A stretch of 63,886 nucleotides of DNA, filler included, from Reticulomyxa filosa (GCA_000512085.1; 18 parts of 18 records of this genome joined end to end with filler, not necessarily neighbours in it); one strand, 5' to 3'. Shown: positions 2,376 through 24,362, counted from the first letter of the whole stretch. Numbers and translations: made by a program. The notes: generated by a model from the sequence alone, not told the origin.

Positions 2376-2464
2376 GTATGTCATCTATATATACATATAT
2401 ATATATATATATATGGTTTTTTTTTTTGTCGTACCCAATGGCATTCCTTTTTTTTTTGTATATG

Positions 2465-2564
2465 NNNNNNNNNNNNNNNNNNNNNNNNNNNNNNNNNNNN
2501 NNNNNNNNTTAATTAATTAANNNNNNNNNNNNNNNNNNNNNNNNNNNNNNNNNNNNNNNNNNNN
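2465..2564. other. Artificial contig linker N44-TTAATTAATTAA-N44 (first of 17)
   Basis: The same 100-bp spacer with stops in all frames recurs at 4445, 5654, 6754, 11267, 13557, 24363, 30728, 32299, 35457, 36967, 39525, 43658, 47630, 49676, 53217 and 62732. Confidence 0.99.
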
Positions 2565-2600
<36 letters not shown>

Positions 2601-2995
2601 GTGTTGTTATTGTTATTGCCAACATTGTCACTGACAGTATTGTTGTTGCTAATTGCGCTATCTGCAATGACGCTGCTATTTGTAGCAGTATTGACATTTG
2701 TTGGATTGTCATTGTCGGTGCTGCTATGTGGATGACTTGTTGAGTCCATTGTCAAGTCTCTCACAGATATTCTCTTCTTCTCCAAACTTGTCACTGATCC
2801 TTTCGATCCACTTTTTTGCCTTATGTGCTGTCGCGGCTGCGCTTTTGCAAGTCCTGATGTTGTGCCAGTACTCGTGCTTTCCAATTTTTGTGTCGATGTT
2901 CCTCCGACGCTCCCACGATCTGAAAAATACGCCGATCGTCCATCTGCACCGACTGCTAGTTGTCGTCTATTCACATTTCCAAAGGCACTTGACGT
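2565..2995 (-). CDS. Low-complexity Ser/Thr/Asn-rich hypothetical protein exon (truncated by contig end)
   Basis: Open frame ending in poly-Asn, with an (AAT)n tract at about 2565-2600 and an A-rich acceptor-like region upstream. Confidence 0.45.
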
Positions 2996-3463
2996 TCTTT
3001 TCTTTTTTCCTTTTTTTTCTCCAAAATTAAACACATCGAGGAGTGGTATCTTTTTTTCCAAATGATCCACTATTTTTTTTTTTAAACCGAGGGCAGCCAA
3101 CCGCCGTTGCAACAAAAATAAAATAAAATATTAGAGAAACGAGAACTTCAGTAGATCATCTTTTTGAGAACGCATTTGCAATAGTGGTATTATATGCAAA
3201 TATAATGGATGATATTTTCTGACAATCTTTTCGACGTCTTTCAATTTGAATTTTTAGGTCAGCACCTTTTAAGATCAATGACAACACTCTTACCTTATAT
3301 TTCACTTTGCTTGTAGGTTTTTAAATAGGTAGATTGTACTCAAGAATGAAAATTATTGCTAAAATCATTCATTTTATATAGTTTTATTTGTTCAGTTTAA
3401 CTTCGCTTGTGGGCATTTCTTGAAAAAACAGAAGCCGAGTTTTCGTCACGCAAAATTTTGATC

Positions 3464-4444
3464 ATGTCTGTTCAAAAATTAGTGAAGATCGCCATCTGGC
3501 TCTTCATTTGGAACTGTTTCTGTGTATATTGTAAATTATTTGACTTTAATGCTCTTCTGGACAATGCTGAGTTTCAATCATTTCTTAACTCGAACTTGAC
3601 ACTCGAATCGGTTGTAGACGACAAAGTGAAGAAGACCCGGCAATCCCGGAGTTTGTTGTTTTCAGACACTCCATCAACACTGTTTCGGCACTATCGCTTG
3701 CAACAAAAGCCCCCAAATGACTATAAACTGCAAGGCGGGGATGTGTTGGTAATAATGGACGATTGGTTTGTGCAAAGCGATAAAACGCAAGAAAAGTCAT
3801 CGAAAAAGCAATATTCGATGCAAACATTAACATTTGCAATGGAATTAGCGAAAAAAGGAAAGGATGAAAGCAATAACGCAAATGCAAAGAAATGGAAATG
3901 GGGATTTACAAGCAGTTACCAAAAGGATAGATTTCCTTACATAAACGACCAGGTTATAGTCCCATCGTCCATCCACGACTTAATTCGGTATCAAATCCCA
4001 TTGGTTTTCACAATCAACCGTGACCGCGTGCTGACAAGAAAACTGGACGAAGACATCAAACGTGCGGAAGAGGAGCTGCAAGAGACAATAAAACAGCAGC
4101 AAGAGTTGGAAAATGCTGCTAAATTACAAACAGAGTATCGTTACCAGGAGAATGTAGATTCTTCTCTGGTTTGTACTTTTTTTTTGACGAGAAAGGGGAG
4201 GAATGAAGAGGAAAAGTGATAAATTAGAAATCGATTAATTAACATTTTTACATATATTATATATGTATATAATATATGTAAAAATGTTGACAACCAATCA
4301 AACGACAATCTCTATTTGTCAACCAATCAAATTGATGAAAAGACATACTACATAAAAGGATAGACATGCAAATCGTCTTGCAGAAAGACGTGGTCGATTG
4401 GAGGCTATGACATTGAAGCAAACCCCTCCTCCTCCTCCTCCTCC
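3464..4444 (+). CDS. Hypothetical secreted or membrane protein with C-terminal coiled coil and poly-Pro (partial)
   Basis: ATG at 3464 followed by a hydrophobic signal-like segment (LVKIAIWLFIWNCFCVYC). Intron from about 4169 to about 4358, then DRHANRLAERRGRLEAMTLKQTPPPPP to the contig end. Confidence 0.55.
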
Positions 4445-4544
4445 NNNNNNNNNNNNNNNNNNNNNNNNNNNNNNNNNNNNNNNNNNNNTTAATTAATTAA
4501 NNNNNNNNNNNNNNNNNNNNNNNNNNNNNNNNNNNNNNNNNNNN

Positions 4545-5653
4545 AGAAAACAACATGTTTATAAATTATTTTTTGCCTTATTGACAGCAAAGCCAATGAA
4601 ATGGAGTTAAGTACAATTGAATAATCTTTTTATGTATATGATAAATAATGAATACAAATACAAGAGTGAATATGCTCGTCATTTATACGCACAAGCAATT
4701 CAAAAATGTTTATTATTGCATTGCAATTACAATTGGATAGAAAATAATTAAGCAATGATGTTTTCAATCATTTGATGAATGGACCCAAATATGATTCAAG
4801 TAATAATGCCCAGTATTTATATGCAAAATCATTTGGAAGGATATCATCACAATTGAATGAAGCTTGGAAAGGATTAAATAACAAATTGGATGATAAAAAA
4901 GAAAATATCCGTCCAGACATTTAAAACCCTCTTAGTGAAATGCAAAGAAAAGCAATTTGATAATATCATCGCCTGTTGGATTGATGAACTCAAAGGTAAA
5001 GATAAAGACACTTGTCGTACATGTGTGGAATCAGTTGTAAATCTCTTGAAAAGTTTAACAAATGGAAAACAATTGGACAATCATTTTCATTGTTTGATAA
5101 ATGGATTAAATGTTGAAAATTGGTATTACACAGAAATACTCCGAAAAATAGCATTACAAGTAAATAATATAAAGATTTTAAATATCATCCATGTAAAATA
5201 ATATTTGAAACAATAGTAACATAATTGAATGAACAGCAATTGGACAATGTATTAGAATTTTTAAAATCTATTAGTCATCCCGATTTTTGCATTGGATTAC
5301 TAAGAATGATATCAATGAAATTGAATAAACGACAAATAAATGATATAACACAAGTTTTGGTATAATTTCGAGAAAGATACACACAAAATGGATTGAAATA
5401 TTATTTAAAGTGAATGAAAGACAATTGAATAATATATTTCATGATAAATAATAACATCACAAAATACTCAAATAATATTATTAAAACCAAGTAACTACAA
5501 ATGAAAGACGCATTTGAATTTTTGAGAAACGGATTTAATAATGAAAATGATGACATTCGCAAATCATGTGTGAATGGGCTTCGAACAATAGTATTGAAAT
5601 TGGATGAAACACAATTGAATACCTTGGCTCATTGGTTGGCAAGATTCGATATT
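4545..5653 (+). pseudogene. Degenerate HEAT/ARM-like alpha-solenoid repeat protein fragment
   Basis: Repeating units such as KQFDNIIACWIDELKGKDKDTCRTC, QLDNHFHCLINGL and AFEFLRNGFNNENDDIRKSCVNGL, interrupted by stops and frameshifts. Confidence 0.6.
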
Positions 5654-7023
5654 NNNNNNNNNNNNNNNNNNNNNNNNNNNNNNNNNNNNNNNNNNNNTTA
5701 ATTAATTAANNNNNNNNNNNNNNNNNNNNNNNNNNNNNNNNNNNNNNNNNNNNTGCATAAGCCAAATTTTTGTGCACCAGCCACATTTGTCACATAGAAA
5801 TATCTCAACATTTTTTCTCGTTTGGCCAAAAAAAAGTTATTTTTGCTTTGGAAAATTTGTAAATTTTTATCACGAAACTATTTTTTTTAATAACATCTTT
5901 GACATCAATTTGTGTCAAGCTTTCTCAAAAAAGCAACAGCGAGCTCACAAGGCCGCCAAATAAAAAGCGATTATTATTGATTTAAATCATTTGAAAATAT
6001 AGAGTGAATCAAAACCACAACGTCAGGATAATCATGTTCTAATTCATCCAAAATAAAACAATCCAATTGCTTCATTGAGCTTTGAAATATTTAATAAATT
6101 AATTCCTAATTACATCGATTCATTTGTATTAGTATTGAAATGACAACAAATAACAGATTTGTCTGTGAATAAGTTTTTTAATTTTCAAATTATCAAAATA
6201 ACATGTTTAACAAGCATTTCGATTTTACTTGAAAAATTGTAAACTTCCACAAATTATAAAAACAATAATTTGGAATATTTTTCAATTATAATATTTTTAA
6301 TTATCAAAACTTTTAACTAATTGTACTTCTTCAGAATTGTTGCTTATTTTAAAACATAGAGTCAATTTACGTTTGTTTTGGTCTAATTTTGTTAGCAAGC
6401 TATTTGTAATACTTTGAATTAACGTTTACATTGAATAATTTCCACTGCTATTATCAATTTGATATAATCCTTGAAAAATTTTCAGTTAAATCCAATTTTC
6501 CAATAATATTTGTCATCTGTAGTCATAGCACGTTTTCACTGATTGATTGAAATGTATAAACACTTTTTCTATGATCACCACTTCCAATGATAATAACAAT
6601 ACTTTTTATTCGTTGTTTATTATGCATATTTTTACAAACAAATATCTTTAAGATCTTTGTTGTAATGTGATTGGTTTTCTGTTAAAAAAGTTTTAATGTT
6701 GAAATTTGATTTAATTGAAAAAAATTGGATTGATAGTAATGAGATTACTTTAANNNNNNNNNNNNNNNNNNNNNNNNNNNNNNNNNNNNNNNNNNNNTTA
6801 ATTAATTAANNNNNNNNNNNNNNNNNNNNNNNNNNNNNNNNNNNNNNNNNNNNTAAGTTGGCAAATGACGACATTATGGAAGTCAACTCAACGACAGAGA
6901 ACGCAAAGACAGAACGTAACGAATAGCAATAACTTAACAATTGGTCCAACAGTCAAAAAAGGTCAAATGATTGGTTGGCAAGTATATGATCCAAGCAGTC
7001 GAGCACGAGATTGGACAATTGGA

Positions 7024-7260
7024 AAAATATTCATGGAAAGAAGATATCCCTTCACAACAATCGCCGAGAAGAAAGTGGTGCGAGATATTAAGGAAAAATT
7101 GTCCCATGTTACTTTTGGCTATGAAAATCAATTGAAGAAAGCTGATATCTCCAGCGAACTGGAACAAAACTACAGTTTTCCTGATGGCCAAGTCATCACC
7201 GTTGGTGCTGACCAGTTCCAATGCTTAGAGGTTTTGTTCAAATCAAGTTTCATTGGATTA
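7024..7260 (+). pseudogene. ACT: Actin internal fragment
   Basis: [29 protein letters not shown]...ELEQNYSFPDGQVITVGADQFQCLEVLFKSSFIG aligns by eye to actin [29 protein letters not shown]...[33 protein letters not shown]. Confidence 0.9.
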
Positions 7261-7742
7261 GGAACATTAATTACGAAAGGAAGCCACAAAAAAGGGTATG
7301 TTTGTGCGAAAAAAAAAAAAGGTGTAATAATTTTTTTTTATCTTCAAAAAAACAAATAAACAAACAAACAAAAAATAGAGAAATTCAAAGACAAACTCAA
7401 CAACATGCTCAATTGTGCCACTTGTTAGGAATTGGGCAATTGATAATTTGTGTGACCAAAATGGATGACCCCTCAGTGAAATGTGATCAAGATCGCTTTG
7501 AGGAAAGCAAATGAAATTAGCTGGCTGTGTTTATAATAGTCAAGGAGTGGATGATGTGATTACTAGACGTATTGAACAAGGAACAATTACTCATTGGTGT
7601 TATCTGGTAAAGCAATTTCTATTGAAATGCATCACAAAATAGTCGACAAAGCCGAAGCTGGTGCCAACATCGGTGTAAACGTGAAAAAATTGAATAAATG
7701 AAAATATGCCACAAATTGGTGATGTGATGTGCATTGATGACC
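7261..7742 (+). pseudogene. EFL: Elongation factor-like (EFL, EF-1alpha-related) fragments
   Basis: ITKGSHKKG, intron 7296-7378, then EIQRQTQQHAQLCHLLGIGQLIICVTKMDD carries the EFL-type KGxHKxGEIQGQTRQH insertion. Domain II motifs follow (GVDDVITRRIEQG, GKAISIEMHHK, AGANIGVNVK, NMPQIGDVM) with stops and frameshifts. Confidence 0.8.
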
Positions 7743-8985
7743 GTAGGTACGTTAAAAGAATGTTTTATATTTACATTATACAACAGTAATAAACATTTAT
7801 TGTATTGTATTGTTATCATAGAACAAATGGCTAACTATTTTTTTTTAATAATGTCGGAGGTAAAAAGCGCCAGTCTCGATATACTTTTCAAAAACTTAGA
7901 ATTCAACAGTTTTTGTTTGCTTGGTCTTTACAACGTCTTGAAGAACACAAGCTCTGGATTATCTGTAAGACCAGTAAAGAAACAAAGTTGACTGTGGAAA
8001 ATTGGCACGAATTAGAAACATTTGAAATAGGCGTTGGCTCAAACAATAAAAAAAAGCATCGTCCTTTTATAAATTTTGGAACGCACAAATTGATATTGTG
8101 CTGAGTTGCAGCAATGGCAACAGGAGCAGTTGATAAGGCGTGTGTTTTGTCCTCGTCTTGTGAGTCCAAAGTGACATTTTCGCTGATCGCATCAGAAAAG
8201 ACTTGTACAACATCGTGGTGAGCGGTGGCACAGCCGAAAGAATGCAAAAGAAATCAAACATTTATATCGACTGAATTGCAAACGTCGACACGTGATTTCA
8301 TTGTTTGCAATGGCAAGCTTTTTTCGAGTTAAAGAAAAAGGCTGTTGCAAATGCCTTGAAGAATGTGGTGGGTCAGAAAATAGTTTTAAAGCGACGGCCA
8401 TAGCTTTTTTTTCTCATTTAAAATAGTTTGAATATATTTGCTTGAATTATTTCAAGCTTAAAGCAACATATAATTCAATACCTTTCTTTTCGCTACTTGG
8501 TCTGTCGGAAAAGAATAGAAGCAAAGAAAAAAAAAGTAAAATAAAATAACCCAACAAAACCAAAGCAGTTCCGCAGATGGAAACATTCCCGCTGGTGAAT
8601 ATTCAAATAAAAACTACACAGCAAAATGTTACTTTTCTAAATATCCAACAATCATGTGAAAGTAACAGCAATTAGAAAGACTTAACATTTCAATCACAAA
8701 AGAAAAAAAAGATATAAAATAAAGAATCAAACGCAACAAATGAACAAAAAACGAGAAAAGTGGATGTGGCAGATTACAGATTCTTTTCCCGTTACTTGAA
8801 AAAAAGTAAAAAAGAGACTTTTTAATAACTAAATTTGATTGATATCTTTTTGTTTGAAAACAAAAAAAAAACAACATGAATGCAATCTTCAATCGATTGT
8901 TTTCTTTTTTTCATTCATTCGAATAATTTTCCAATTCTTTATCAATGTGCTATAGTTTACAAAAAATCAATACGTTATATTTTAA

Positions 8986-11224
8986 TTACTGCCAAAAACA
9001 GCAGAAGAAAAAAAGAGTAACTTGAAGCAGATTGGAATTGAGTAAAGAGGCCAATTTCAAAGATTTTAAATACGCTAAAACGGAGTCTTTGTTTTGGTTG
9101 TTTGTAGTAGCAATGTACTTGAGCCCATGTCGAAGAACTTCCATCCAAGTTTTGTGTTTGGTTTCAGTATCTCGCACGGCGATGATAAACTCTTTGAAAA
9201 TGACGACAAGATTGTCTTTGGCTCCATGTACGGACATTGTAGCGAATATGGCTCCATAGAATTCTGGCAGTATTGGTATGTTCATACATTCAAGCTCAAA
9301 ATTTTTCACGAACTCTTTGTCAATATCAACAATGATGGAATAAGATAACCAGCCTTTCGTCACCGGGATCTTCATCCAATGCACAAAGTAGGTCATGACT
9401 TCATCTGGACTCCATCCTTGGCATACTTGGTTGATTAGTCCCGTCCACACATGGCCCGTCCATCGGTCCAAATATCGCAGCACAAAGCCTTCCGCCGTTT
9501 TCAATTCCTGATTGCGTAAGCACTTTTGCACGGTTTTGGCGAGTTCTTCATCGCTAAGATCGTCTCTCGGCCTGCCGATGTGACTCCATTACTATTGTTT
9601 CTATCTTCCTCCTCTCACTCTTATTACTTTCCTTTGTTATCATTGTCATTGCCATTGTCATCATTGTTATTGTCTTCCAAATAAACTCCATATAAAAAAA
9701 ATCCCTTATTCGGAAAGCGCAAGTTAAGTCTGAAAATAAACTCCTCAATTTTACTTTTGAATATTTTCCAAAATGCATTAACATGTTGGGTGTTGGTGAA
9801 ATAGTATATTTTCCCATCCATTATAATTTGATCATTTAAATGTATTGCCATCAATGAAATATCTTTGGTTTCCGCTTTTTTTTTATTTCATCTGTTTGTG
9901 TTAAGGAAAATTTGAGCCCTTGTTTTTTCTTTTTTCTATTCTGCCACAATTGAGATTGACTCTTGATAAAATTATTCAATGCAGTTTCATCATTGAGATC
10001 GAGTCCAGTGTAAACTATCAACTTCATTGCAATGAGAACATTGACATATTCCACAATTCGGTAGATTCGAATGTCACTAATCCCCATGATCTCATCATAC
10101 ATGTTATCTGGCAAATCCATTACTCTTCTTTCATGATATAAATTTATAACTTTTACTTCACTCAATCTTTTTTTTTTCCAAATAAAATAACAGCCTCAAA
10201 AATGATAATGTAAATAATTTTAAAAAATGTAACAAAACTGTTCGTCCTTAAATATTTCTGAATGTCCACCAATAATGGCCAAGAACAAAGATAAAGGAAA
10301 CAAATGAATGAAATTGACATAAAGCATATTAATCATTTTAACTCGTCGTGATGATTGTCTTACTCTTCTTTTGATATTATTCGCGAATTTGAATAGAATT
10401 GGAGCTTGTGTGTTTGTTTCCACTCTATTTGCTCTCAAACTGGGCAGTGAAGGTATACTATTTACATTGTCAATTGTTATTTCAGTTATATTTTCATTAG
10501 CATTAGCATTAAAACAATGTCTCTGTGGAAAATGATACAAATAACGGCCTTGCAAGCGATCATAGCAGGTAGTATTTGTATTCTTTTCAATCCAACGACT
10601 CCTTTGTTGATATCTTTTCCATTCTTGATTCATCGATGTATCCAAACGAATATTTTCAGTTTTATTAGAAAATAATTGCCTTTGTCTTCGTGGGAAACGA
10701 TAAACTGACTTTTTTTGCATTCTTTTTTGGCAATCTTGTTTTCGCAAATCAATTTTAATTTGTATAGTTTGAATCGATTTGATAGAATGTTGTTTGTAAA
10801 AATCATATAACCATTCATGAAAACTCCACACTCTACAATTAAATGGTTTCATAAAGCCATAATAATAATACATATGACTGGAACTCTTGTCTTTGTTTAT
10901 ATTACTTTTGCTTGTTTCATCATGAATCGTTGTTACTGGAGTGTTTATGTCTTGTTTAATTGTAATATTTGAAGTAAAATCATCCTCATGTCGGAGTGTG
11001 TTGGAGGAAAATTGTCCATTCACATTATGATGTTGCAAATTTGTGCACTGTTTTATCTTTTGTTGCATATCCAGATTGTTCACATCCACATTTTTTTCCA
11101 CAATCAATACTGTATATCCATCGTTATTTTGAATATTTACTATTTCTATTAACTCATCGTTACACAAATCCTTTATCAATCGCGAAAATGTACTGCTATC
11201 CAATAGTGTTGTTTTATTCGTCAT
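8986..11224 (-). CDS. Hypothetical multi-exon or frameshifted protein(s)
   Basis: A chain of same-strand ORFs (10220-11224, 9851-10165, 9624-9854, 8986-9531) with protein-like composition. No motif recognised. Confidence 0.4.
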
Positions 11225-13656: not shown

Positions 13657-16600
13657 GAGTTGACTCCGGCTTCACCGATCGACGTTCGACTGTTCCGTTT
13701 TAGTGAGGACAAGAAACATTCTCAATGGGTGTGCTGGGGTTCTCCTTATGAAGGTGTTGGTAAGATCGGCTATGAGATGCAGTTTAGCAGCAATTACAAA
13801 GACGAAAAACACAAAATTTGTCGAGTCAATTGCTAATCCACTTGTCCCTAGCTCGCAAAGCTATCACTTCTTTGTATATACTCAATCCGAATTTGAAGGG
13901 ATTGAATACACTTCCAGTGCAAGTGATACCCTCGAAATCATCAGCGAAAACATAGTTCGAACAGAATCTCCATTCATGTATCACATTGTTTTGCTCACGA
14001 GTAAAGAATTAAAAAATGGTGAATATTATATGCAGCCGATTATTGATGGTTAATCAAATTTTTTTTTTTTTCTTAACTTTCGTATTACACAAATGTCAAC
14101 ACTTGTGTATTTGATTGGGTGCGCTTTATGTGTTATTGGATATGGGGGGGGGGGGGGGAAAAAAAAGGTGTGGAATCAGAAGTTCCCAATTTATTTGAAA
14201 AAATTGCAAGCGGTGCTAATGTGTATTGGTGTGTTTGGGATTCGAATCCATTCAAATCACAATCAAATAAATGGATAATGAAAATTAAAACATTTGAAAA
14301 TGTAAAACGAAACAATTATCAAATGACATGGATTTCAGACGAGCAATGGCGTATTGATCCAAATGTTCAAGTACTGATTGTTGATATTTCGGAAAAAAAA
14401 CTTCTTGGTCGCCACCAAGATGCTTATGGAGACTATCTCCTTGCAATTTTGGAATATTTGAGCTCGCGAATAAATGAGCCCATTCCTGTTGAAATAGCTC
14501 TTGAAGTATTGGACCAATATTTTCAGCATTGAGAAAAAAAAGGAGTCGACAAAAAAAAATTAATCAAAAAATTTGTGGATACTATTAAAACTGATTTGTC
14601 AACATTGATAAATGGAACTGATGCCCCACCTTGGGAAGGAGTTTTGTCCATTATCTTTATTTTTGATTTTGTTGAATGCATTAACAAAACTAAATTATTG
14701 CAACCTCAATAAAAAAAAATAAAAATAGGTACTCAATGGCCTGTTTGGATTTTGTGCGCAACTCCTTTATGCACCAGATCATTTACTTCCTGAATCCTAT
14801 TTTAAATTCTACAACTTTCTTTGCGAGTCAAAAATGGACCCAACGGTACCATTTTATCACAAACATTGCAATTTTTTTATTTAATCTTAATTGTTAACAA
14901 TTATTTTCATATCCGTGTGTGTGTGTGTGTGTGTGTGAAATAGGTTATAGCAAAGAGAATGGCGGCAATGGTTGGAGTTAAATTGGAAATGATTCAATCC
15001 GCGCTGTGCAAAAAAGCCAGTGAAAACGTAATGGGAGATGCGCGGTACCAACGGTTGTTGTGGTACAATCTGTTTGGTGCTATTTCTCCACCTCTACGAC
15101 AATTAGATCAAACCCATCAAATCAGAAAATTACCAATCTCTTTAACTATCCCAAGAATTGATATTTTGTCTTGTGTTGAAAAAGAAATGAAATTCTTTGG
15201 AAAGTTAAACCGCCCAATTCCATCAGAGGAATTTTATTTTTTTCATTTGCTGCGACACAGTCATGTACGTGCAGAGCCGGTGATCGATTGGATGAAAGAG
15301 AGTTAATTTCATTTTGAAAAATCTTTGAAAAAACAAATTGCACGTGAATTGTTGTTTACAAAAAAAAATATAAAATAAAATAAAAGTATTGGATTTAATG
15401 GAAAAACATCTATCTGGTGCGCCGGGAATAATGGCGAAGTTGTTCGATAAATACAAAGACGGATTGAAGAAATTAATTGATGGCTTAAAAAACTTTGAAT
15501 TGAGCATGAAAGTAATTGGAGAGATGGTTCGTCGAACCAAATCCAACGAAAATATTTTGAATATTGTAAATGCGTGGATTATTGATGATATAGTCCAGCA
15601 AATCCAAACGTCAAACGACGTCAATATTTTTTGTAATACTTTGCAATTGTTTTCAACTCCTTCCAATGCACTCATCTTCAAAATTTTGGAAAATCCGCAA
15701 TTGAGATCGGACAACCGGCTTTTACATTTTTATATCGACATCATGAAGGCTTGTCTGTTTTTTTTTTTTTTTGAAATTGTGATGACAAACAACATTAATG
15801 AAACTAAACTTTATTTTGTTTGTGTTGACAAGTCACCAAATCCTTTGCCTCAATTTCGATCGAAAATAGTCTCAATCTTTAGCATTTGGTTAAAAAAAAT
15901 GGGCTTATATTTTGTGTTGATCAAATTGTCCAACATAATTTGAATTGGGACTTATTCGAGTCCGTTCTCAAAAGCGTATCTATCTCCGAATATTTAAACA
16001 ATTCTTTTCTCGATAAACTGCATTTATTATCCATTGACTCCATGCCCCTCACTTGTTAAGTTTTTTTGAGATATCATAAAACAACGATTACACTAATAAC
16101 AAAAAAATGACAGTGAAACAAAAAATAATCAAAAGTATATCACATCAATGGGTAACAAAACCAACAAAGACTTCAAGACATAGACCAGGCACAGAACTTT
16201 TTTTGGATAAAAACGAGCAAATGGAGAGCATCAAACTAATTAAAAAGTGGGCAAAAGATGGATCATTATCGAAGCTTGCCGTGGAATTCATGGAACAATT
16301 ATTAGACAAAACAGATCTACTTCGTTGCGACCGTCCAACTGATCCTATCCTCTATTTTACTTCTGAAGAAGGGTTTCAATTGTTGCGGTTAAGTGAATAT
16401 AATACATTTATGTATTGTATGCATAATGTATATTTGCATATTTTGTGTCAAACTGTCTGTTTTAAAAAATAAAAGTCTCCTGCATGAATTAATGCCAAAT
16501 ATCAAAGTGAGTTTAATGGATAAGTATTGCTCATGGTTTGAACATTTGTGTACAAGCATTATGCAAGAAGAGATTAGCGTGGGATCAATGGAGATATTAG

Positions 16601-19600
16601 TAACGGACAGAAGACTAAAAAGGTTATTAAGTTTGTGGGAATCATTCGAGTTGAGAAGCGATGCAGTCAATGTTTCAGTTGTCACAAAATTGGCAGATGA
16701 ATTTGAAGAAATAACCAAAAACGTGGAGTTAATCAGCATTTTTTTTAATAAAAGTGGAATTTCAGCCGCTTTTTATGGCAAAGACTTGCAAGAATTACAT
16801 AAATCGTACACGGAAATGACACCAGCACAGAACTGGCCTCAATTGACTCTGAAAGAGGCACTCAAAAGAGATTGGACTTTGTTTAATGATTGGAGGAAAT
16901 ATTTCTTGGCTTTTGAAAAAGTCCAAATATCGGATATCTCTTTGTCGATGTGGACTTCATCTGTCTCACGTCTTGAATACTTGTGGAGCGTAGTTATGTT
17001 CCTTTTTGTTATCTATTTTGTGAAATGCTTGAGTTGTTCAATACACAAAAATATAGAAACCCTTTTCGAAGATAAACTTATACAAATTAGATGAATGGGT
17101 GAGAGAAAAAGTAAGAGAACTTGTAAGGGATTTGGACGATTTTGATTTGGAAAAGTACGTTCACAGATTTTTTGAACAAGAGATTGATGGACAAAAAATT
17201 GATAGCCATGATTGGAACGAACAAAAGTCTATTGCAGGCATTGTATCCAAATGAAAAAGTTGGCACAAATGAAACAACGATCACATCTCGTTTGTGGGAA
17301 GCCATTCAACAGAAAGTTTTCTTTTTTTTTTTCACTTTTATATATTATATTTACATAAGATTACATTCAATATCATTAACAGACACTAACTCAATAAATG
17401 AATAAATGAATAAATAAATAAAAAAGAAAGAGGAACTTGCAAAGACATTGGAACAATATCCACCAACTCAACGACAGTTTCATTCCGGAACGGTAGTGGA
17501 CATCTTAACCAAAGTCAGAGACAATTTCAAGACTACAATGACAAAATTGAAGGATAAGACTATCACTGGATCGGCAATATCCACGGATTTTGGTTTGTTG
17601 CGGGGAAAACAATTGGAGGAAATTTGTCGGCAAGTTCGACATATGTTCCAACCTCATAATGACACCATTGAAAAATTGGTATTGTCTGCAGTGGAACAAA
17701 ATGAAATGGGCTGTACCTTTCTTCAACCTCCGATACAAATTGAATCAGTTCAATCAGAAGTTATTACTATTGGACTAATCATGAGAATCTTTAACTTCAA
17801 AATGCCATCCATAAAGCATCAAGGAGATGACAATCAAGAGAGAGTACTTGTGCGTGTTATTAAAAGTGAAATTGCACGGGTGATGGACGCAGAGGGAAGT
17901 GAGTCTGTCAGAGGCAATTCGATTCGATGGACCAATATCATGCAAGCATGCGAACTTTCCGAAAATTTGGAGAATTGGCTGAAATTTATAACATATCACG
18001 CAATTTTAAAGAAAACCGGAAGCATGTGGAAACACAGAATTGATGAATATGATCAAATTGGAACCAATTTGGAACACGTGTTTAAGTGTCTCGATGGCGT
18101 GGACGCATTGAAATTGCTCAGAGATGTTACAAATACATTTAGTCTTTTGTACAAACGAGAAACAAAACCTGATTGGGAAGATAAAGAATGGCAACGAAAA
18201 AAAGCTTTGTTGAGATCATTTGACAATATTGAAATGAAAAATATTCTTACCTTTTGGCAAATCAATAAGTTGCTTTTCTTTTGGAAGATGAAACAGAAAA
18301 AAGAGAGGGATTACTATTTGAAAGGAACACATGCACTACAAAACTACTATTTTTTGAAAACATAGAAATGCTCTGCCAGGTGTTTCTCCTCTTCAGATGG
18401 ATTGGCTGAAATTAATGGCAAGCAATGGAAAAGTAGTGAAAGAGTGTTATATCATGTTCCAGAGTGACGAACGATTCCACGAACATTTGAAAAACTTTGC
18501 TGAAAACGACCCCGTCCAACATCGACGAAGCACCAGTTTGATGGATGTGCGCACTTTTGTAGTCGATTTTCTTAGAACTGATTTTGATAACATTACGGCA
18601 ATGTTACAGAAATTGTTGCGATATGTTGAACACAAGGTGAGCAAAGAAAAAATTGACAATCTCAACACAATCTGTTTGTCATGGAACACAATTGTCCAAG
18701 ACATAATGGATCCACAAGGTTGGCTCCATCAGAAAGATAAGGAATTGCTTGAGACCATCGAAAGTGTGTATTTTTGTGAAGACAAGATACCAAATTTACA
18801 GATCAAATGTTCTTTGCCTGCAAAAGTTTCTGCCAACAAAGAAGAAAAGAAAGATGAATCCAAATCAGATGATTTGATGACACAAGAGACTTTTGAGCAG
18901 TTGACGGATCGATTGTTAATGTATATGACAGGTGACGCCAGTGGCGTAGACACTGAAGTATTGACACAAAAAGGATTTAGTGGAATGACATCCGAAGATA
19001 CCGTCAATTGGTTGCAAACGCATAAAAAACAAATACCATCAATGGACACGGATACATTTAGTGTAGTGCTAAAACGAATTAGCTTGCAAAGCATAAGCGG
19101 CAGGGTGTTGTGCAGTTTTATCAAAAAAAATGCGCGTGATATTAGAAATATATTGGTTGGACAAGATGCTCATCCTTCCGTCAATGTAGAGCAGATTGTG
19201 ACCGAATTGACAAAAATCATTAAATTTGAAATGCTCAAAGAAAAAATCAAAAATGATTTGATTCCGAAATTCGATATTTTTAAAAATATCGCAAAAAAAA
19301 GAATGGAATATCATGCATTGGGTGGTAGAGAAGGATTAGATGATGAGCAAATTATCGAATTCAAAAAAAGTGAAACAGAGATCAAAGGGATTGAAGAGCA
19401 ATGGGGAAAACGTTTGTCGCGATGGAGTGCCTATGTCGCAGATCTTCGAAAGAGATACAACGTTTTATCATATTTCACTGTCAATGACATGCGATCGTTA
19501 AATACTAATTTGCAAAAGTATTTCCAACAGGGTAATAAAATCGATTTGCTTGCGGATATTGCATCAAAGATATCTTTTATTAATCCAAATCTGAGCATTA

Positions 19601-22600
19601 GGGATATTGAACAAAGCATCAATTTAAAAAAACAGTGGAATGCAGATGTAAAAGATTGGTTATATCAATTGGGTGAATTTTTATCAAATTCCAAAGCACA
19701 ACGTTGAAACAAGAAATGTTCACAAGTATTTAAAAACAGGACAACCTCATTTGTTTACTTGCAGTGATGTCCAGGTATTATCTCATTTGATTAAATTGTA
19801 TTTGACCCAAGGAGAGCCACCAACTTCAAGTCGGGTATTGTTCTGTGATCATTCTACTTCCATGGAACAACTTGAATGTTTTTTGAATCGAAGCACGGAC
19901 ACCAATCTCCAAACATCAGTGGTGGGTCGTTTGCATTGCTTGGTGCTCCCCGAATTGTTGACTCGATCCATTCAACAACAATTGATAAAGATTCTTCCTT
20001 CTTATACTCGAAAACCTCGTTATCTATTGGTTGTGATTAGCACAAATAGTCAATGTTTTGTTGCTCAGGAATTGAGTTTGTATCGTAATACTGAAATACC
20101 AATTTTGCAACAACAAGAAAGTAAAGAATTTTATTCGACTGTATTTTGTGACAATTTTGAAAAATTTCGTGAAAAACAGAATAACGCACCATTCGTGACA
20201 GTCTTTTTCTCTCAACAGCCATGCGTTGGAAAATCATATACTATTTCACAATGGGCAAAAAAGTTGGATTTGAAACCAAAATGCTTTGTTCATGTCCCAA
20301 TTAATACATTTGTAGTCGATACAGATTTCATTGTCAACCGATTACTCCAGGCTCCTTCCACCACTGATGATTTGATTGTATTTCATATTAATATTTCCAG
20401 TCAAGCTGGGAAAGATGTAAACACATTAATGTTTCAATTGCTTGTTTTGCGTTATATTGTCAGCCAAGAAGGAAAGGGCTTCACTGTACGTAAAAATCAT
20501 GCATTTTTAGTAGAATTACCAACGGAATTGTCGAACACACATAAAAACACATCGTTAACGAATGTGTTTGATTGGTTTTATTTTTTTGGAGATCGTATCA
20601 AGGATTTGTCAATTCCTTTTCTTGAAATCATTGATGAAATGAGGATTATCAAGCCTAGATTTGACAAATTTGAAATCAATAAATTTCATATTTCTCCAAA
20701 AGAAATGTTCGTATTAAAGTACCTGGATGCACTGGATACAGATTTATTAAAACCTGAGGATATTTCCACAAAGGAAGTATTCATGATAACATACTTTGAT
20801 CAAAGCAAGTTAAAGACTCAAAATGACTGGGACTACACAAAGCATCCAGATATTAACAAAACAAGAATGATGGAATTGATTACCAAATATGCATCAGCAG
20901 GTACTCGATCTTTTAATATGTTCATATACATACACACAAACTGCAATTTTTGTCCAATTAACTATTACTACTATAATTACTACAATGTTGTTTGCGATGT
21001 TTTAGCCAAAGAGAGTTTGGTGCAATTGAAATCGTTTTTGCAGTTTTTGTACAAACAATTGGTCCAATTAAACCAATTTTTGTACATCAAACGTCAATAT
21101 GCACCGAGTGATAAAAGACATCTTATCCCTTTACATGTAATGATTGCTACATCGCTTGTGAAATTCGCTGCTCATATTGCTTGTGACACTTACGAAGGAC
21201 GTAATGGTGGCGAAGTGGATGAAGACGAAAAATCCAAAGATATTGAAGAAGCTGAAGGAAAAAAAGAATTTCTTTTGGTACAATTGTGGAAAAAAGCAGA
21301 TCCACCAATGGTGTTATTTAATCAGCTTGCAATTACAGATTCCGTTCAAATTCACATGCAAAAGACGAGTTTAGATGAAGACTTGAAATTAATGGAAAAA
21401 AAAATGGAGCACACCTTGTCGCTGCTGTCAGTGAATTTGAGAAAAAATAAACATCTCCATGCGGATGAGTGGAGATTACTTATGAAACAATATTCATGGG
21501 ATCTTTATAACTTTGAAGATGAAGATTCACAATACAAACCATTGCCAAATACCAAAAAAAATGAGGAAAAAGAAAAAGAAAAAAAAGACCTAAGTGATCA
21601 AATGAAAAAATTACAGCTGTTATTACAAATCTGTGGCGGATTCACATCCAAACATGAAGAAAAAAGAGAAGAGCAAATGGAAGAAATCCTAAAGAAACAC
21701 GGCGATTATGCATTAACCTTTGACAATATTTTGAAAATGGTGGCAATATTTTTCCGAATTAAGTCAGGCATTCCTGTTTTGATCATGGGAGAAACAGGAT
21801 GTGGCAAAACCAAATTACTCAAAGTCATGGCTGATGTCTTGGGTCTTGAAATGGCATCCATCGATGTCCATGGAGGATATACCATTCAAGATTTGCAAAA
21901 TGATTTGGCAAAACCATTGAAACAAGCCAAGGAACGACCCGAAATAACACATTTGATATTTTTGGATGAAATCAATACCAGTCCTGAAATTAGCACATTT
22001 AAAGAGGTGATATGTGATCACAGTTTGAACGGAGAGGTATTTCCAGACAACATAGTTGTTATCGCTGCATTACATCCATATCGATCTCACCACAGGTCGC
22101 AAGACGAACTCAAAGACGAGAAAGAAGAAGAAAAGAATATCCCAAAATTTTATTTGGATGATTTAGACAAAGAAATGTGCCAATTGGTGTATCGTGTATT
22201 TCCATTGCCCAAATCACTGCGAGCATATGTGTGGAATTTTGGATCATTATCGGCATCTGATGAAAAGCAATACATTGCCGTAATGACATCAAACACTTGG
22301 ACAAAACAAGAATTCCTAGGTTCAACTACGATATCACCTCAGCAATTGGATGAATTGAAAACATTGTTTGTGGAGTTGATATGTATTTCTCAGAAATTTG
22401 TGAGAGACAGTTTAAAAGATCGAAGTGTGTGCTCACTACGTGATGTTCGACGTGCCAACTCATTGTTCTTGTGGTTCTTCAAAAATCGAGAGACAATTGG
22501 CACTGCTTACAGCATCCTTGAAGCGATTACTTTATCTCTTGCGCAGTGTTATTACTATCGCTTGAATCAACCACAAAGAGAGAAATACAATAAATTAATT

Positions 22601-24362
22601 TCCACAGAAACTATGGAATGTAATACTGATATTAAATTGGATTTAATTGTCAAACGTGAACAAGACAGGTTTGGCTAACAAAGATTAACAATTTTATTTG
22701 TCAATAAAACTGTATATTTTTGTTTGTTTATAGATACATTCGAGCATTGACAATTCCTCCTGGCATTGCCACCAATCGTGCATTTTCAGAAAACTTGTTT
22801 GTAATGTTGGTCGGATTGGCAACCAAAACACCAACTATCATCGTTGGAAGACCTGGTTTTGATATATTCACGCTCTCTTTTTTATGACATTATTTGAATA
22901 TAAACATCTTTGAAATTTTGATTGACTAATACTTGTAGGTTCTTCAAAGACTCTTGCCATGGCCACGGTTCACAGCAATCTGTCCTCTGCAAGCAAGAGT
23001 AAGCAACTAACTGAAATGGGATATGATGACTTCTTTGTGGTTCGTCTTTTTTTTCAAGTATTTATTGCATGTTGTATGCAAAAATAAATCTTTTGAAATA
23101 CACAGATATCATTCCAATGCTCAAAGTTAACCACAGCCGATTTAATTAAGAAGAGATGGGATGATGCTGTAGAATTTCAAGATACACTTCGAAAAGTAGC
23201 AAAGCAAAAAGAAGGAGATAAAAAAAAGGATCCAATATCTCCTGCGGGAAACGCTGCGAACGCAACATCGAATCGCAGTGTCGTATTATGGCTGGACGAA
23301 GTTGGCTTAGCGGAACACAGTCCTCATCGGCCTTTGAAAGTATTGCATAAATTATTGGAAGATGGCAATCCAACAATTGCTTTTATTGGATTAAGTAATT
23401 GGAAATTGGATGCAGCAAAGATGAATCGAATGGTACTGCATCAAGTGACACAACCAGATGATCAAGAACTAGTCCACACTGCGCAGGCTATATTGAACGA
23501 AAAGAGCGAAGGAGAAAATGACACCTTGCAACAACAGCTTAATGCAAAGATACAAAACATTACACGATTTTATGACAGTGTGATGACTGATCAGAACAAT
23601 TCCCCATTCCAATTTGATTTTTATAGTTACAGAGACTTTTATTCGTTGATTGGTTATTTGAAGTTCATTTGTCAAACACGTGGTCGTTTATCCAATGCGT
23701 TGTTGGTGGAAAGCATTATGCGAAACTTTGGTGGAATGACCAAAGAACAAACAGAAGCCTATCTGTTCCCAAAAATTGCTCAATGTTTTTATAATGGTGC
23801 TTTGCCAGTATCGGAATTTATTTGGAAAGATGTTTCACCTTTACAATTAATCCGACTTAATATTGAACAAACACAACATCCAAAGACGCCATCTATGCGA
23901 AACATTATGCTTATCACTGAGTCTCCAGTAATGTGGAAAATTTTATTTGACAGTGGCATTGCCATGACAGAATCAACAGAAGTCATTTTTGGTAGCAAGT
24001 TCCCTGGGGATATCCATTCCACGATTCATTTGTATCGAACTATTGAGAAAGTCAGAAATGCCATGGCCACTGGCAAAACTTGTATTTTGTTGAAACTGGA
24101 GCAATTGTATGATTCATTGTATGATGTGCTCAATCAAAGATACCAAACTGTCGATGGACAAAAGTTATCTTGTTTATTTATTCTTGTTTTATTTTATTAA
24201 TTTATGTATTGTCATTTGATTAATGTTGTTGTTTGTTGAAATCACAGATTTTGTCAAATCTGTGTTGGTGGAGAGTCAATCCGTTGTCGAATTGCGAAAA
24301 ACTTTCGATGTATTGTGGTGGTGCCTAGGGAAGAGGCATTCCATGAAGTTAAATCAATCAAA
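13657..24362 (+). CDS. RNF213/mysterin-like giant multi-AAA+ ATPase (both ends truncated, multi-exon)
   Basis: YALTFDNILKMVAIFFRIKSGIPVLIMGETGCGKT (Walker A, 21788-21811), IFLDEINT, LVYRVFPLPKSL, VWNFGSL, CSLRDVRR. Second ATPase: IATNRAFSENLFVM...IIVGRPG/SSKT (intron 22856-22938), SFQCS, VLWLDEVGLAEHSPHRPLKVLHKLLE, FIGLSNWKLDAAKMNR, FGSKFPGD, LYDSLYDVLNQRY. The motif order matches RNF213. Confidence 0.9.

What the first reader, a model, noticed from the sequence alone, without database searches (positions are those of the whole stretch)
17057..17315. Hidden SAM domain encoded as a single phase-0 exon within the RNF213-like stalk
Seen: exon 17057-17315, flanked by AG and GT in phase 0, reads KPFSKINLYKLDEWVREKVRELVRDLDDFDLEKYVHRFFEQEIDGQK and, after removing one A from the run at 17193-17198, LIAMIGTNKSLLQALYPNEKVGTNETTITSRLWEAIQQK. 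This fits the SAM consensus W...V..l..l.l..Y...F...eIDG..Ll......L..l...G.....l..aI. The ORF track misses it. Known: human RNF213 has no annotated SAM domain; SAMs mediate polymerisation or RNA binding. Inference: an exon-shuffled SAM could give this ATPase a self-assembly or sensing function, an architecture I do not recognise as described.
Basis: partly seen in the sequence, partly recalled or inferred. Interest (0 to 1): 0.8.

Follow-up and report, generated by a model that had tools for sequence, protein, structure and literature searches.

The report
SAM-fold module in foraminiferal RNF213-like gene

Summary
The piece is Reticulomyxa filosa contig ASPP01005072.1. Its six annotated + strand models are fragments of one RNF213-like gene (PDB RNF213, E 2.5e-51).

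Exon 17057-17315 is real. It has AG and GT borders in phase 0 and is conserved in at least 9 R. filosa paralogs.

A 96%-identical sister contig keeps the A6 run at 17193-98. It has A3 where the window has A4 at 17223-26.

By sequence the domain is not a demonstrable SAM:
- Pfam SAM_1 reaches 16.9 bits at best against a cut-off of 23, in 2 of 10 copies.
- A family profile found only 12 proteins among 1.84 billion, none a canonical SAM protein.

By predicted structure it is a SAM fold. The AlphaFold2 model of the intact sister copy has pLDDT 82. An exhaustive PDB search gave 50 of 50 top entries as SAM/PNT domains (Z 8.0-4.5). Foldseek and the ESM Atlas agree.

A second, intact SAM-fold module lies at 18964-19254 (Z 9.4).

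Recent exon shuffling, polymerisation and sensing are unsupported. No sequencing runs were listed, so whether the extra A is an assembly error or a real lesion stays open.

The parts
16483..16992 (+). Upstream coding exon, ending ...SRLEYLWSV. The donor GT is at 16993-94.
   Evidence: Annotated models P0011 and P0014 read WSV|KPFS. All paralogs keep the W-x-x-x-P spacing. The exon is collinear with paralogs.
16993..17056 (+). Phase-0 intron of 64 nt (GT...AG). L008, L003 and L007 have an intron at the same position. L002 and the metagenome contig L009 do not.
17057..17315 (+). SAM-A exon, encoding the whole divergent SAM-fold domain of about 86 residues. The frame is broken once.
   Evidence: Sequence and frames. 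Paralog conservation: E 8e-25 and 1e-14. AF2 model of the intact sister copy: pLDDT 81.9. SAM matches: Foldseek, VIA-align with 50 of 50 top entries, Atlas with 10 of 10 rows. Pfam SAM_1 only E 0.0084 and 16.9 bits.
17193..17198 (+). It is not the lesion: the intact sister copy carries the same run.
17223..17226 (+). A4 run carrying the real +1 frameshift. The intact sister contig has A3 here. More distant paralogs show a one-base excess at the same place.
17243..17426 (+). Artificial intron of the deposited model RFI_05904 (donor GT at 17243). It dodges the frameshift and deletes the last two helices of the domain.
   Evidence: P0011 reads ...WNEQKSIAGI|KEELAKT, compared.
17316..17426 (+). 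Phase-0 intron of 111 nt (GT...AG). L002 has an intron at the same position. L007 probably does too, since its deposited model reads on past ...LITKR into codon GTN. The L008 contig ends 51 bases into this intron. L003 and L006 have none.
17427..18269 (+). Next coding exon (KEELAKTLEQYPPTQRQF...), a helical region conserved in paralogs.
18964..19254 (+). SAM-B, a second SAM-fold module. It is intact in the window and aligns with a Bolivina argentea protein.
   Evidence: Alignment A4. AF2 pLDDT 75.1. VIA-align: 50 of 50 top entries SAM/PNT, Z up to 9.4, 75 of 75 residues at rmsd 2.1. hhalign to SAM-A: probability 70.8%, E 3.8e-5.
21704..22489 (+). AAA+ unit homologous to RNF213. It matches residues 1830-2093 of chain 6tax_A and 2432-2695 of chain 8s24_A.
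   Evidence: E 2.5e-51. Pfam AAA, AAA_8 and AAA_5.

Best explanation
Exon 17057-17315 encodes a very divergent five-helix SAM-fold domain, SAM-A. It lies in the N-terminal arm of a giant RNF213-like AAA+ protein of Reticulomyxa filosa, roughly 1,400-1,500 residues upstream of the RNF213-type AAA unit.

The domain is a fixed part of a foraminiferal paralog family, with at least 9 copies in R. filosa. It is not a recent insertion. About 550 residues downstream there is a second SAM-fold module, SAM-B, which is weakly similar to it.

Shown: the exon, its conservation, the position of the frameshift, and the predicted fold.

Inferred: like other SAM domains, the two modules most likely act as protein-protein contact points of the arm. 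They could bind each other, other paralogs or partner proteins. They may also serve simply as rigid building blocks of the helical arm.

In the window copy the domain is broken by one extra A in the run 17223-26. This is either a homopolymer error of the draft assembly or a recent lesion in one of two 96%-identical copies. The deposited protein RFI_05904 hides it with an artificial intron.
For: RNF213 homology:
- PDB sequence search gives E 2.5e-51.

Organism and gene fragments:
-.

Conservation in one frame:
- L003 49% identity, E 8e-25; L002 35% identity, E 1e-14.
- Further copies P0010, P0012 and P0013-P0018.

Position of the frameshift:
- Sister contig, 96.1% identical over 2.8 kb, has A3 against the window's A4 at 17223-26 and shares the A6 run.
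- The DNA alignment with L003 and L002 shows the same one-base excess.

Fold:
- AF2 model: pLDDT 81.9, pTM 0.68, five helices.
- Foldseek against PDB: the listed top hits are almost all SAM domains, probability up to 0.99, TM by target 0.59-0.74.
- VIA-align against 48,161 chains: all 50 listed entries are SAM/PNT, Z 8.0-4.5, covering for example 71 of 72 and 69 of 69 target residues.
- ESM Atlas shape search: 10 of 10 rows are SAM families.
- Language-model neighbours include SAM_1, SAM_2, SAM_TNK and SAM_NCD1 clusters.

Weak sequence echoes in the window copy:
- Pfam SAM_1 at E 0.0084.
- The three best PDB phmmer hits are the CNK and polyhomeotic SAM domains, aligned in register on W...Y..F..QEIDGQ.

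SAM-B:
-.
Against: - No copy passes the Pfam SAM_1 cut-off. The best score is 16.9 bits against 23, and only 2 of 10 copies score at all.
- Family profiles hit no SAM chain in PDB sequences.
- The family profile hit no canonical SAM protein among 1.84 billion representatives.
- The structure is a prediction from a 10-sequence alignment.
- Z values of 8-9 lie in the range that the tool warns can reflect a common helical arrangement.
- No transcript or read data were available.
- pN/pS in the SAM exon between the two sister copies is about 1.0, from 2 synonymous and 9 non-synonymous changes, which is too few to interpret.
- There is no evidence of any kind on function.
Confidence: 0.72

Rival explanations
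1. The segment is just one of the generic helical bundles that make up the RNF213-type N-arm. Its likeness to SAM is a convergent arrangement of five short helices, without common ancestry or SAM-like behaviour.
For: - Mouse RNF213's N-arm is described as 'a string of helical bundles' (PMC7311170).
- No significant sequence match to SAM from the profiles.
- The Z values are at or below the tool's caution level for helical proteins.
Against: - All 50 listed entries out of 48,161 chains are SAM/PNT, for both modules, and they cover the full length of the target domains.
- No RNF213 chain is among the entries listed by Foldseek or VIA-align.
- Independent weak sequence signals point to SAM specifically.
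Confidence: 0.17
2. The window copy is a dying gene. The extra A at 17223-26 is real, the SAM-A exon no longer yields a folded domain in this copy, and only the sister copy and other paralogs are functional.
For: - The frameshift is present in the deposited assembly while the 96% sister contig is intact.
- The SAM exon shows 9 non-synonymous against 2 synonymous differences between the two copies.
Against: - The rest of the gene is collinear with paralogs over 8 kb and has long open exons, including one of 1001 codons.
- The upstream exons give pN/pS 0.38.
- The lesion sits in a homopolymer. Most other length differences between the two contigs also lie in or next to short single-base or simple repeats. 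That pattern also fits assembly error.
Confidence: 0.4
3. One reading: an assembly error in the A6 run 17193-98 hides a canonical, recently exon-shuffled SAM domain.
For: - Removing one A there also opens the frame.
- The exon is symmetric, with phase 0 at both ends.
Against: - The intact sister copy carries the same A6.
- All paralogs follow frame 1 for ten more codons, including a conserved W.
- The domain fails the Pfam cut-off and has no close relative outside the family.
- The flanking introns are shared family positions that some paralogs have lost.
Confidence: 0.02

Closest known systems
SAM (sterile alpha motif) domains, Pfam SAM_1/SAM_2/SAM_PNT, e.g. Shank3, polyhomeotic/PHC3, CNK, Hyphen/Aveugle, SARM1
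   Same: - A five-helix bundle of about 70 residues with a long last helix. The predicted models superpose on whole SAM domains at rmsd 1.9-2.8 A.
- The motif W...Y..F..(E/D)IDG between helices 1 and 3 aligns in register with the polyhomeotic and CNK SAM domains.
   Different: - Sequence similarity is below every curated threshold.
- The loop before the last helix is longer.
- The domain is embedded in the middle of a giant AAA+ protein.
- No evidence for polymerisation, RNA binding or any other SAM activity.
RNF213 / mysterin (mouse 6TAX, human 7OIK, 8S24)
   Same: - Homologous AAA+ unit (E 2.5e-51).
- A long, mostly helical N-terminal region ahead of the AAA core.
   Different: - No SAM domain is described for mammalian RNF213.
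- No RNF213 chain appears among the structural matches listed.
- The foraminiferal N-arm has no detectable sequence similarity to the mammalian one.
- The gene family is expanded in R. filosa.
- One paralog carries an fn3 domain at its N end.
- The RING/E3 module is not on this contig.
SARM1 / TIR-1 (tandem SAM domains in an immune enzyme)
   Same: Two SAM-fold modules in one large protein. Both SARM1 and C. elegans TIR-1 are among the structural matches.
   Different: In SARM1 the SAM domains are adjacent and form an octameric ring (established knowledge, not tested here). Here the two modules are about 550 residues apart and their oligomeric behaviour is unknown.

Membership tests
SAM domain (Pfam SAM_1 PF00536 / SAM clan) | Scores above the Pfam gathering threshold | tested here: not met
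   The best score is 16.9 bits (E 0.0084) against a cut-off of 23, for window:17057-17227. Only 2 of 10 family members score at all. SAM-B gives no hit.
SAM domain (Pfam SAM_1 PF00536 / SAM clan) | Five-helix SAM fold of about 70 residues | tested here: met
   This rests on predicted structure only.
- SAM-A: pLDDT 81.9; VIA-align gives 50 of 50 top entries as SAM/PNT, Z up to 8.0; Foldseek probability up to 0.99; Atlas 10 of 10 rows.
- SAM-B: pLDDT 75.1; Z up to 9.4 with 75 of 75 residues aligned.
SAM domain (Pfam SAM_1 PF00536 / SAM clan) | Profile-level sequence homology to known SAM domains | tested here: inconclusive
   Family profiles find no SAM in PDB sequences and none among 1.84 billion representatives. 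The window copy alone gives in-register but non-significant matches to the polyhomeotic and CNK SAM domains, at E 0.7-0.85. A profile-profile search against a SAM library was not available.
SAM domain (Pfam SAM_1 PF00536 / SAM clan) | Self- or hetero-association, or RNA binding | not testable with these tools
   This needs recombinant protein.
RNF213-like AAA+ E3 ligases | Dynein-like AAA units homologous to RNF213 | tested here: met
   phmmer against PDB: nine distinct RNF213 sequences at E 2.5e-51 to 7e-48, with ORF residues 678-939 matching 6tax_A 1830-2093. Pfam AAA, AAA_8 and AAA_5.
RNF213-like AAA+ E3 ligases | C-terminal E3 module with RING (and RZ finger) | not testable with these tools
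   The contig ends at 24362 within the AAA region. The rest of the gene lies on other contigs that were not linked.
RNF213-like AAA+ E3 ligases | N-arm or stalk homologous to the mammalian one | tested here: inconclusive
   No sequence match from single sequences or from an 821-position family profile. The placement is by order along the protein only.

The most novel reading that the evidence does not exclude
The two SAM-fold modules are real interaction surfaces. Through them the many RNF213-like paralogs of R. filosa would assemble head-to-tail into homo- or hetero-polymers. That would make a polymerising form of a giant AAA+/E3 machine, a behaviour not described for mammalian RNF213.
Probability: 0.12. 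Interest if true: 0.65.

Novelty: new variant of a known kind. Interest (0 to 1): 0.42.

Why it matters
RNF213 is a giant immune and vascular-disease E3 ligase, and the function of its N-terminal arm is poorly understood. A protist lineage that builds SAM-fold modules into this arm offers a handle on what the arm does, such as docking or oligomerisation. It also shows that domain families too divergent for HMMs can be recovered by structure prediction.

There are two practical results. The deposited protein RFI_05904 is a mis-modelled fragment. The six gene models on this contig should be merged into one gene.

Tried and rejected
- Sequencing runs for reads or cDNA: none was listed. Read laying was therefore not used, and neither the A3/A4 question nor the splice junctions could be checked in reads.
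- Pfam on each exon half and on the paralog copies gave only sub-threshold SAM_1 and DUF7804 hits.
- BLASTP of the exon halves against the ORF that holds SAM-B found nothing. Only the profile-profile comparison linked the two modules.
- Profiles against PDB sequences hit no SAM and no RNF213 N-arm.
- The R. filosa genome paper is not in the held library. The sequencing platform, and so the likelihood of homopolymer error, could not be cited.
- pN/pS between the sister copies rests on too few changes to decide between a live and a dead gene.

Full report
**What the piece is.** The 10,706-base piece (window 13657-24362) is Reticulomyxa filosa contig ASPP01005072.1, from assembly GCA_000512085.1.
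- The deposited annotation splits it into six + strand gene models. tblastn of longer paralogs shows a single collinear gene from about 16116 to 24356, with frame changes at short gaps that fit introns.
- The 1001-codon ORF 19673-22675 matches nine distinct PDB sequences of mouse and human RNF213 at E 2.5e-51 to 7e-48 over an AAA+ unit. It also hits Pfam AAA, AAA_8 and AAA_5.
- The gene is therefore RNF213-like in its AAA core. The E3/RING part is not on the contig.
- R. filosa has many paralogs. One related fragment comes from the foraminifer Bolivina argentea (P0006).

**Checking the observation.**
- Frame 1 reads KPFSK...EIDGQKIDSHDWNEQKSIAGIVSK and then stops at 17252-54. The tail LLQALYPNEKVGTNETTITSRLWEAIQQK lies in the next frame.
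- The upstream junction is better placed at 16992/17057 (WSV|KPF), using the GT at 16993. The deposited models read this way, and every paralog has three residues between the conserved W and the P/N position. Both choices are phase 0.

**Where the frame is really broken.** A local tblastn showed that paralogous loci carry the whole domain in one frame: L003:3358-3621 at 49% identity and E 8e-25, and L002:8727-8978 at 35% and E 1e-14.
- These loci, and paralogs P0010, P0012 and P0015-P0018, read ...IDG.(K/R)(I/V)(D/E)...W.E(Q/K).LL..L(F/Y)P. That follows the window's uncorrected frame for ten codons past the A6 run, including a conserved W.
- A DNA alignment puts a one-base excess in the window between ...CAAAAG and CTATTG.
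- The decisive comparison is contig ASPP01041786.1 (L008; protein RFI_37299, P0014). It is 96.1% identical to window 14544-17365, with 77 mismatches and 21 length differences.
- In L008 the A6 run at 17193-98 is identical. The only length difference in the exon is A3 against the window's A4 at 17223-26. The frame is open...EIDGQKIDSHDWNEQSLLQALYPNEKVGTNETTITSRLWKAIQQK.
- The deposited model RFI_05904 (P0011) avoids the stop by splicing from a GT at 17243 to 17427. This removes the last two helices of the domain.

**Error or real lesion?** No sequencing run could be listed, so this is open.
- For an assembly error: the lesion lies in a homopolymer; most other length differences between the two contigs also lie in or next to short single-base or simple repeats; the rest of the gene is open and collinear; and the upstream exons give pN/pS 0.38.
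- For a real lesion: it is in the deposited assembly, and the SAM exon shows 9 non-synonymous against 2 synonymous differences between the sister copies. Those numbers are too small to carry weight.
- I put about 0.4 on a real lesion.

**Is it a SAM domain by sequence?** It is not demonstrably one.
- The first 57 residues of the window copy hit Pfam SAM_1 at E 0.0084 and 16.9 bits, against a cut-off of 23.
- The sister copy gives E 0.026. Only 2 of 10 family members score at all.
- phmmer of the first half against PDB sequences puts CNK SAM and two polyhomeotic SAM entries on top. They align in register on W...Y..F..QEIDGQ, but at E 0.7-0.85.
- Family profiles A1 and A3 find no SAM chain.
- The A1 profile, run against 1.84 billion representative proteins, found only 12 proteins at E <= 0.001. 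Eight of the nine strong ones are named R. filosa proteins. The ninth, P0013, is the 1176-residue model on R. filosa contig L002.
- Of the three weak hits, one is a eukaryotic-looking metagenome contig (P0021). The other two match only the LCEWIR(E/D)N helix motif in a repeat protein.
- No canonical SAM protein was reached.

**Is it a SAM domain by structure?** The prediction says yes. I folded the intact sister copy (P0014:283-382, about 90% identical to the window exon) with a 10-sequence paralog alignment.
- The model has pLDDT 81.9 and pTM 0.68. It shows five helices after a poorly defined lead-in helix from the upstream exon.
- Foldseek against PDB: no hit below E 0.001. The listed hits are nearly all SAM domains, including Shank3, CNK, polyhomeotic, Hyphen, Scm and SAMD1. 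Probability reaches 0.99 and TM by target is 0.59-0.74.
- VIA-align, which is independent of Foldseek, compared the model with 48,161 representative chains. All 50 listed entries are SAM or SAM_PNT domains, or TEL-SAM fusions. Z is 8.0-4.5 and rmsd 1.9-3.3 A. Coverage is often the whole target, for example 71 of 72 and 69 of 69 residues.
- The ESM Atlas shape search gave 10 of 10 rows as SAM families.
- Language-model neighbours include four kinds of SAM cluster, at lead-level scores only.
- The tool warns that Z below about 8-13 can reflect common helical arrangements. The unanimity of the hits, the full-domain coverage and the weak sequence echoes make a true SAM fold the best reading, at about 0.7-0.75.

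**A second module.** The ORF 18397-19704 contains a similar pattern (...MTSEDTVNWLQTH...LQSISGRVL...).
- I folded window:18907-19356 with five relatives, including the Bolivina sequence. The model has pLDDT 75.1.
- Residues 20-116, which are window 18964-19254, again give 50 of 50 SAM/PNT entries. Z reaches 9.4, with 75 of 75 residues at rmsd 2.1 A. The last helix runs on into a 44-residue helix.
- The module has no Pfam hit by sequence.
- hhalign of the two families gives probability 70.8% and E 3.8e-5 over 64 columns in register. The two modules may therefore be old duplicates.

**Exon shuffling?**
- The two phase-0 introns that bound SAM-A in the window recur at the same positions in several paralogs. 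The upstream one is in L008, L003 and L007. The downstream one is in L002 and probably in L007, whose deposited model reads on past ...LITKR into codon GTN; the L008 contig ends 51 bases into it.
- Each intron is absent from others. L002 and L009 lack the upstream intron. L003 and L006 lack the downstream one.
- The 'one exon, one domain' layout is thus probably ancestral to this paralog family, with later intron losses.
- Nothing points to a recent shuffle. No similar SAM exon was found anywhere else.

**Relation to known RNF213.**
[quoted passage not shown] The word 'sterile' does not occur in it (PMC7311170).
- Papers in the held library that mention both RNF213 and SAM appear, from titles and abstracts, to do so for other proteins such as LRSAM1.
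- No RNF213 chain is among the structural matches listed. Absence from a top-50 list is not proof.
- The foraminiferal N-arm shows no sequence similarity to the mammalian one, even as an 821-position profile. 'Within the stalk' is therefore a statement of order along the protein, not of homology.

**Mechanism.**
- Shown: a conserved, compact, predicted SAM-fold module is encoded by this exon, and a second one lies downstream.
- Inferred from what SAM domains generally do: these are contact modules of the arm, possibly for self- or hetero-association among the many paralogs or for docking partners. Alternatively they are merely rigid spacers.
- No tool result bears on this choice.

**Verdict.**
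- The exon and its SAM-like nature stand at the level of predicted fold.
- The repair site, ten residues, the upstream junction and the shuffling story do not stand.
- The architecture of an RNF213-like core plus two cryptic SAM-fold modules appears undescribed in the library searched. It is a modest, testable novelty.

**Procedural note.**
- The frame-corrected peptide was built only inside local scripts from the window file. It was not sent to any search or folding tool.

Noticed in passing
window 18964-19254 (+): A second SAM-fold module (SAM-B), intact in the window. It is invisible to Pfam, aligns with a Bolivina argentea protein, and is weakly similar to SAM-A by hhalign.
   Followed up: yes
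window 13657-24362; L001 gene models 121-1056, 1303-2287, 2451-4709, 4759-6051, 6206-9231, 9413-10544: The six deposited gene models, which include RFI_05904 and RFI_05906, are fragments of one RNF213-like gene. RFI_05904 contains an artificial intron (17243-17426) that truncates the SAM-A domain.
   Followed up: partly
L008 (ASPP01041786.1) versus window 14544-17365: A 96.1%-identical sister contig with 77 mismatches and 21 length differences, most of them in or next to short single-base or simple repeats. It is either a diverged allele or a very recent duplicate. Which of the two was not resolved.
   Followed up: partly
window 14915-14930: A short (GT)n tract in a probable intron differs by 4 bases between the window and the sister contig.
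   Followed up: no
P0016 (RFI_07840) residues 135-220; L002 3731-5843: At least one paralog carries a Pfam fn3 domain (E 9e-9) at its N end, upstream of the SAM-A region. The start of the window piece (13660-13836) resembles that region by eye but gave no Pfam hit.
   Followed up: partly
P0019, P0020 (JGI metagenome proteins): Repeat proteins with units of about 90 residues that contain the motif LCEWIR(D/E)N or LCKWIKEN. They matched only the first-helix motif of the SAM-A profile. This is probably an unrelated helical repeat.
   Followed up: no
L009 (ENA ERZ893790 k147_1911700) 1878-2627: A metagenome contig encodes a relative of the region upstream of SAM-A plus the first half of SAM-A. It then appears to enter an intron after ...EIDGIKL. 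This would be a relative of the family outside the R. filosa assembly, with a different intron position.
   Followed up: partly
window 17057-17197 (+): A sub-threshold Pfam hit to DUF7804 (E 0.0016-0.0028, 18-19 bits against a cut-off of 27) on the first helix region of the window copy only. Its meaning is unknown.
   Followed up: no
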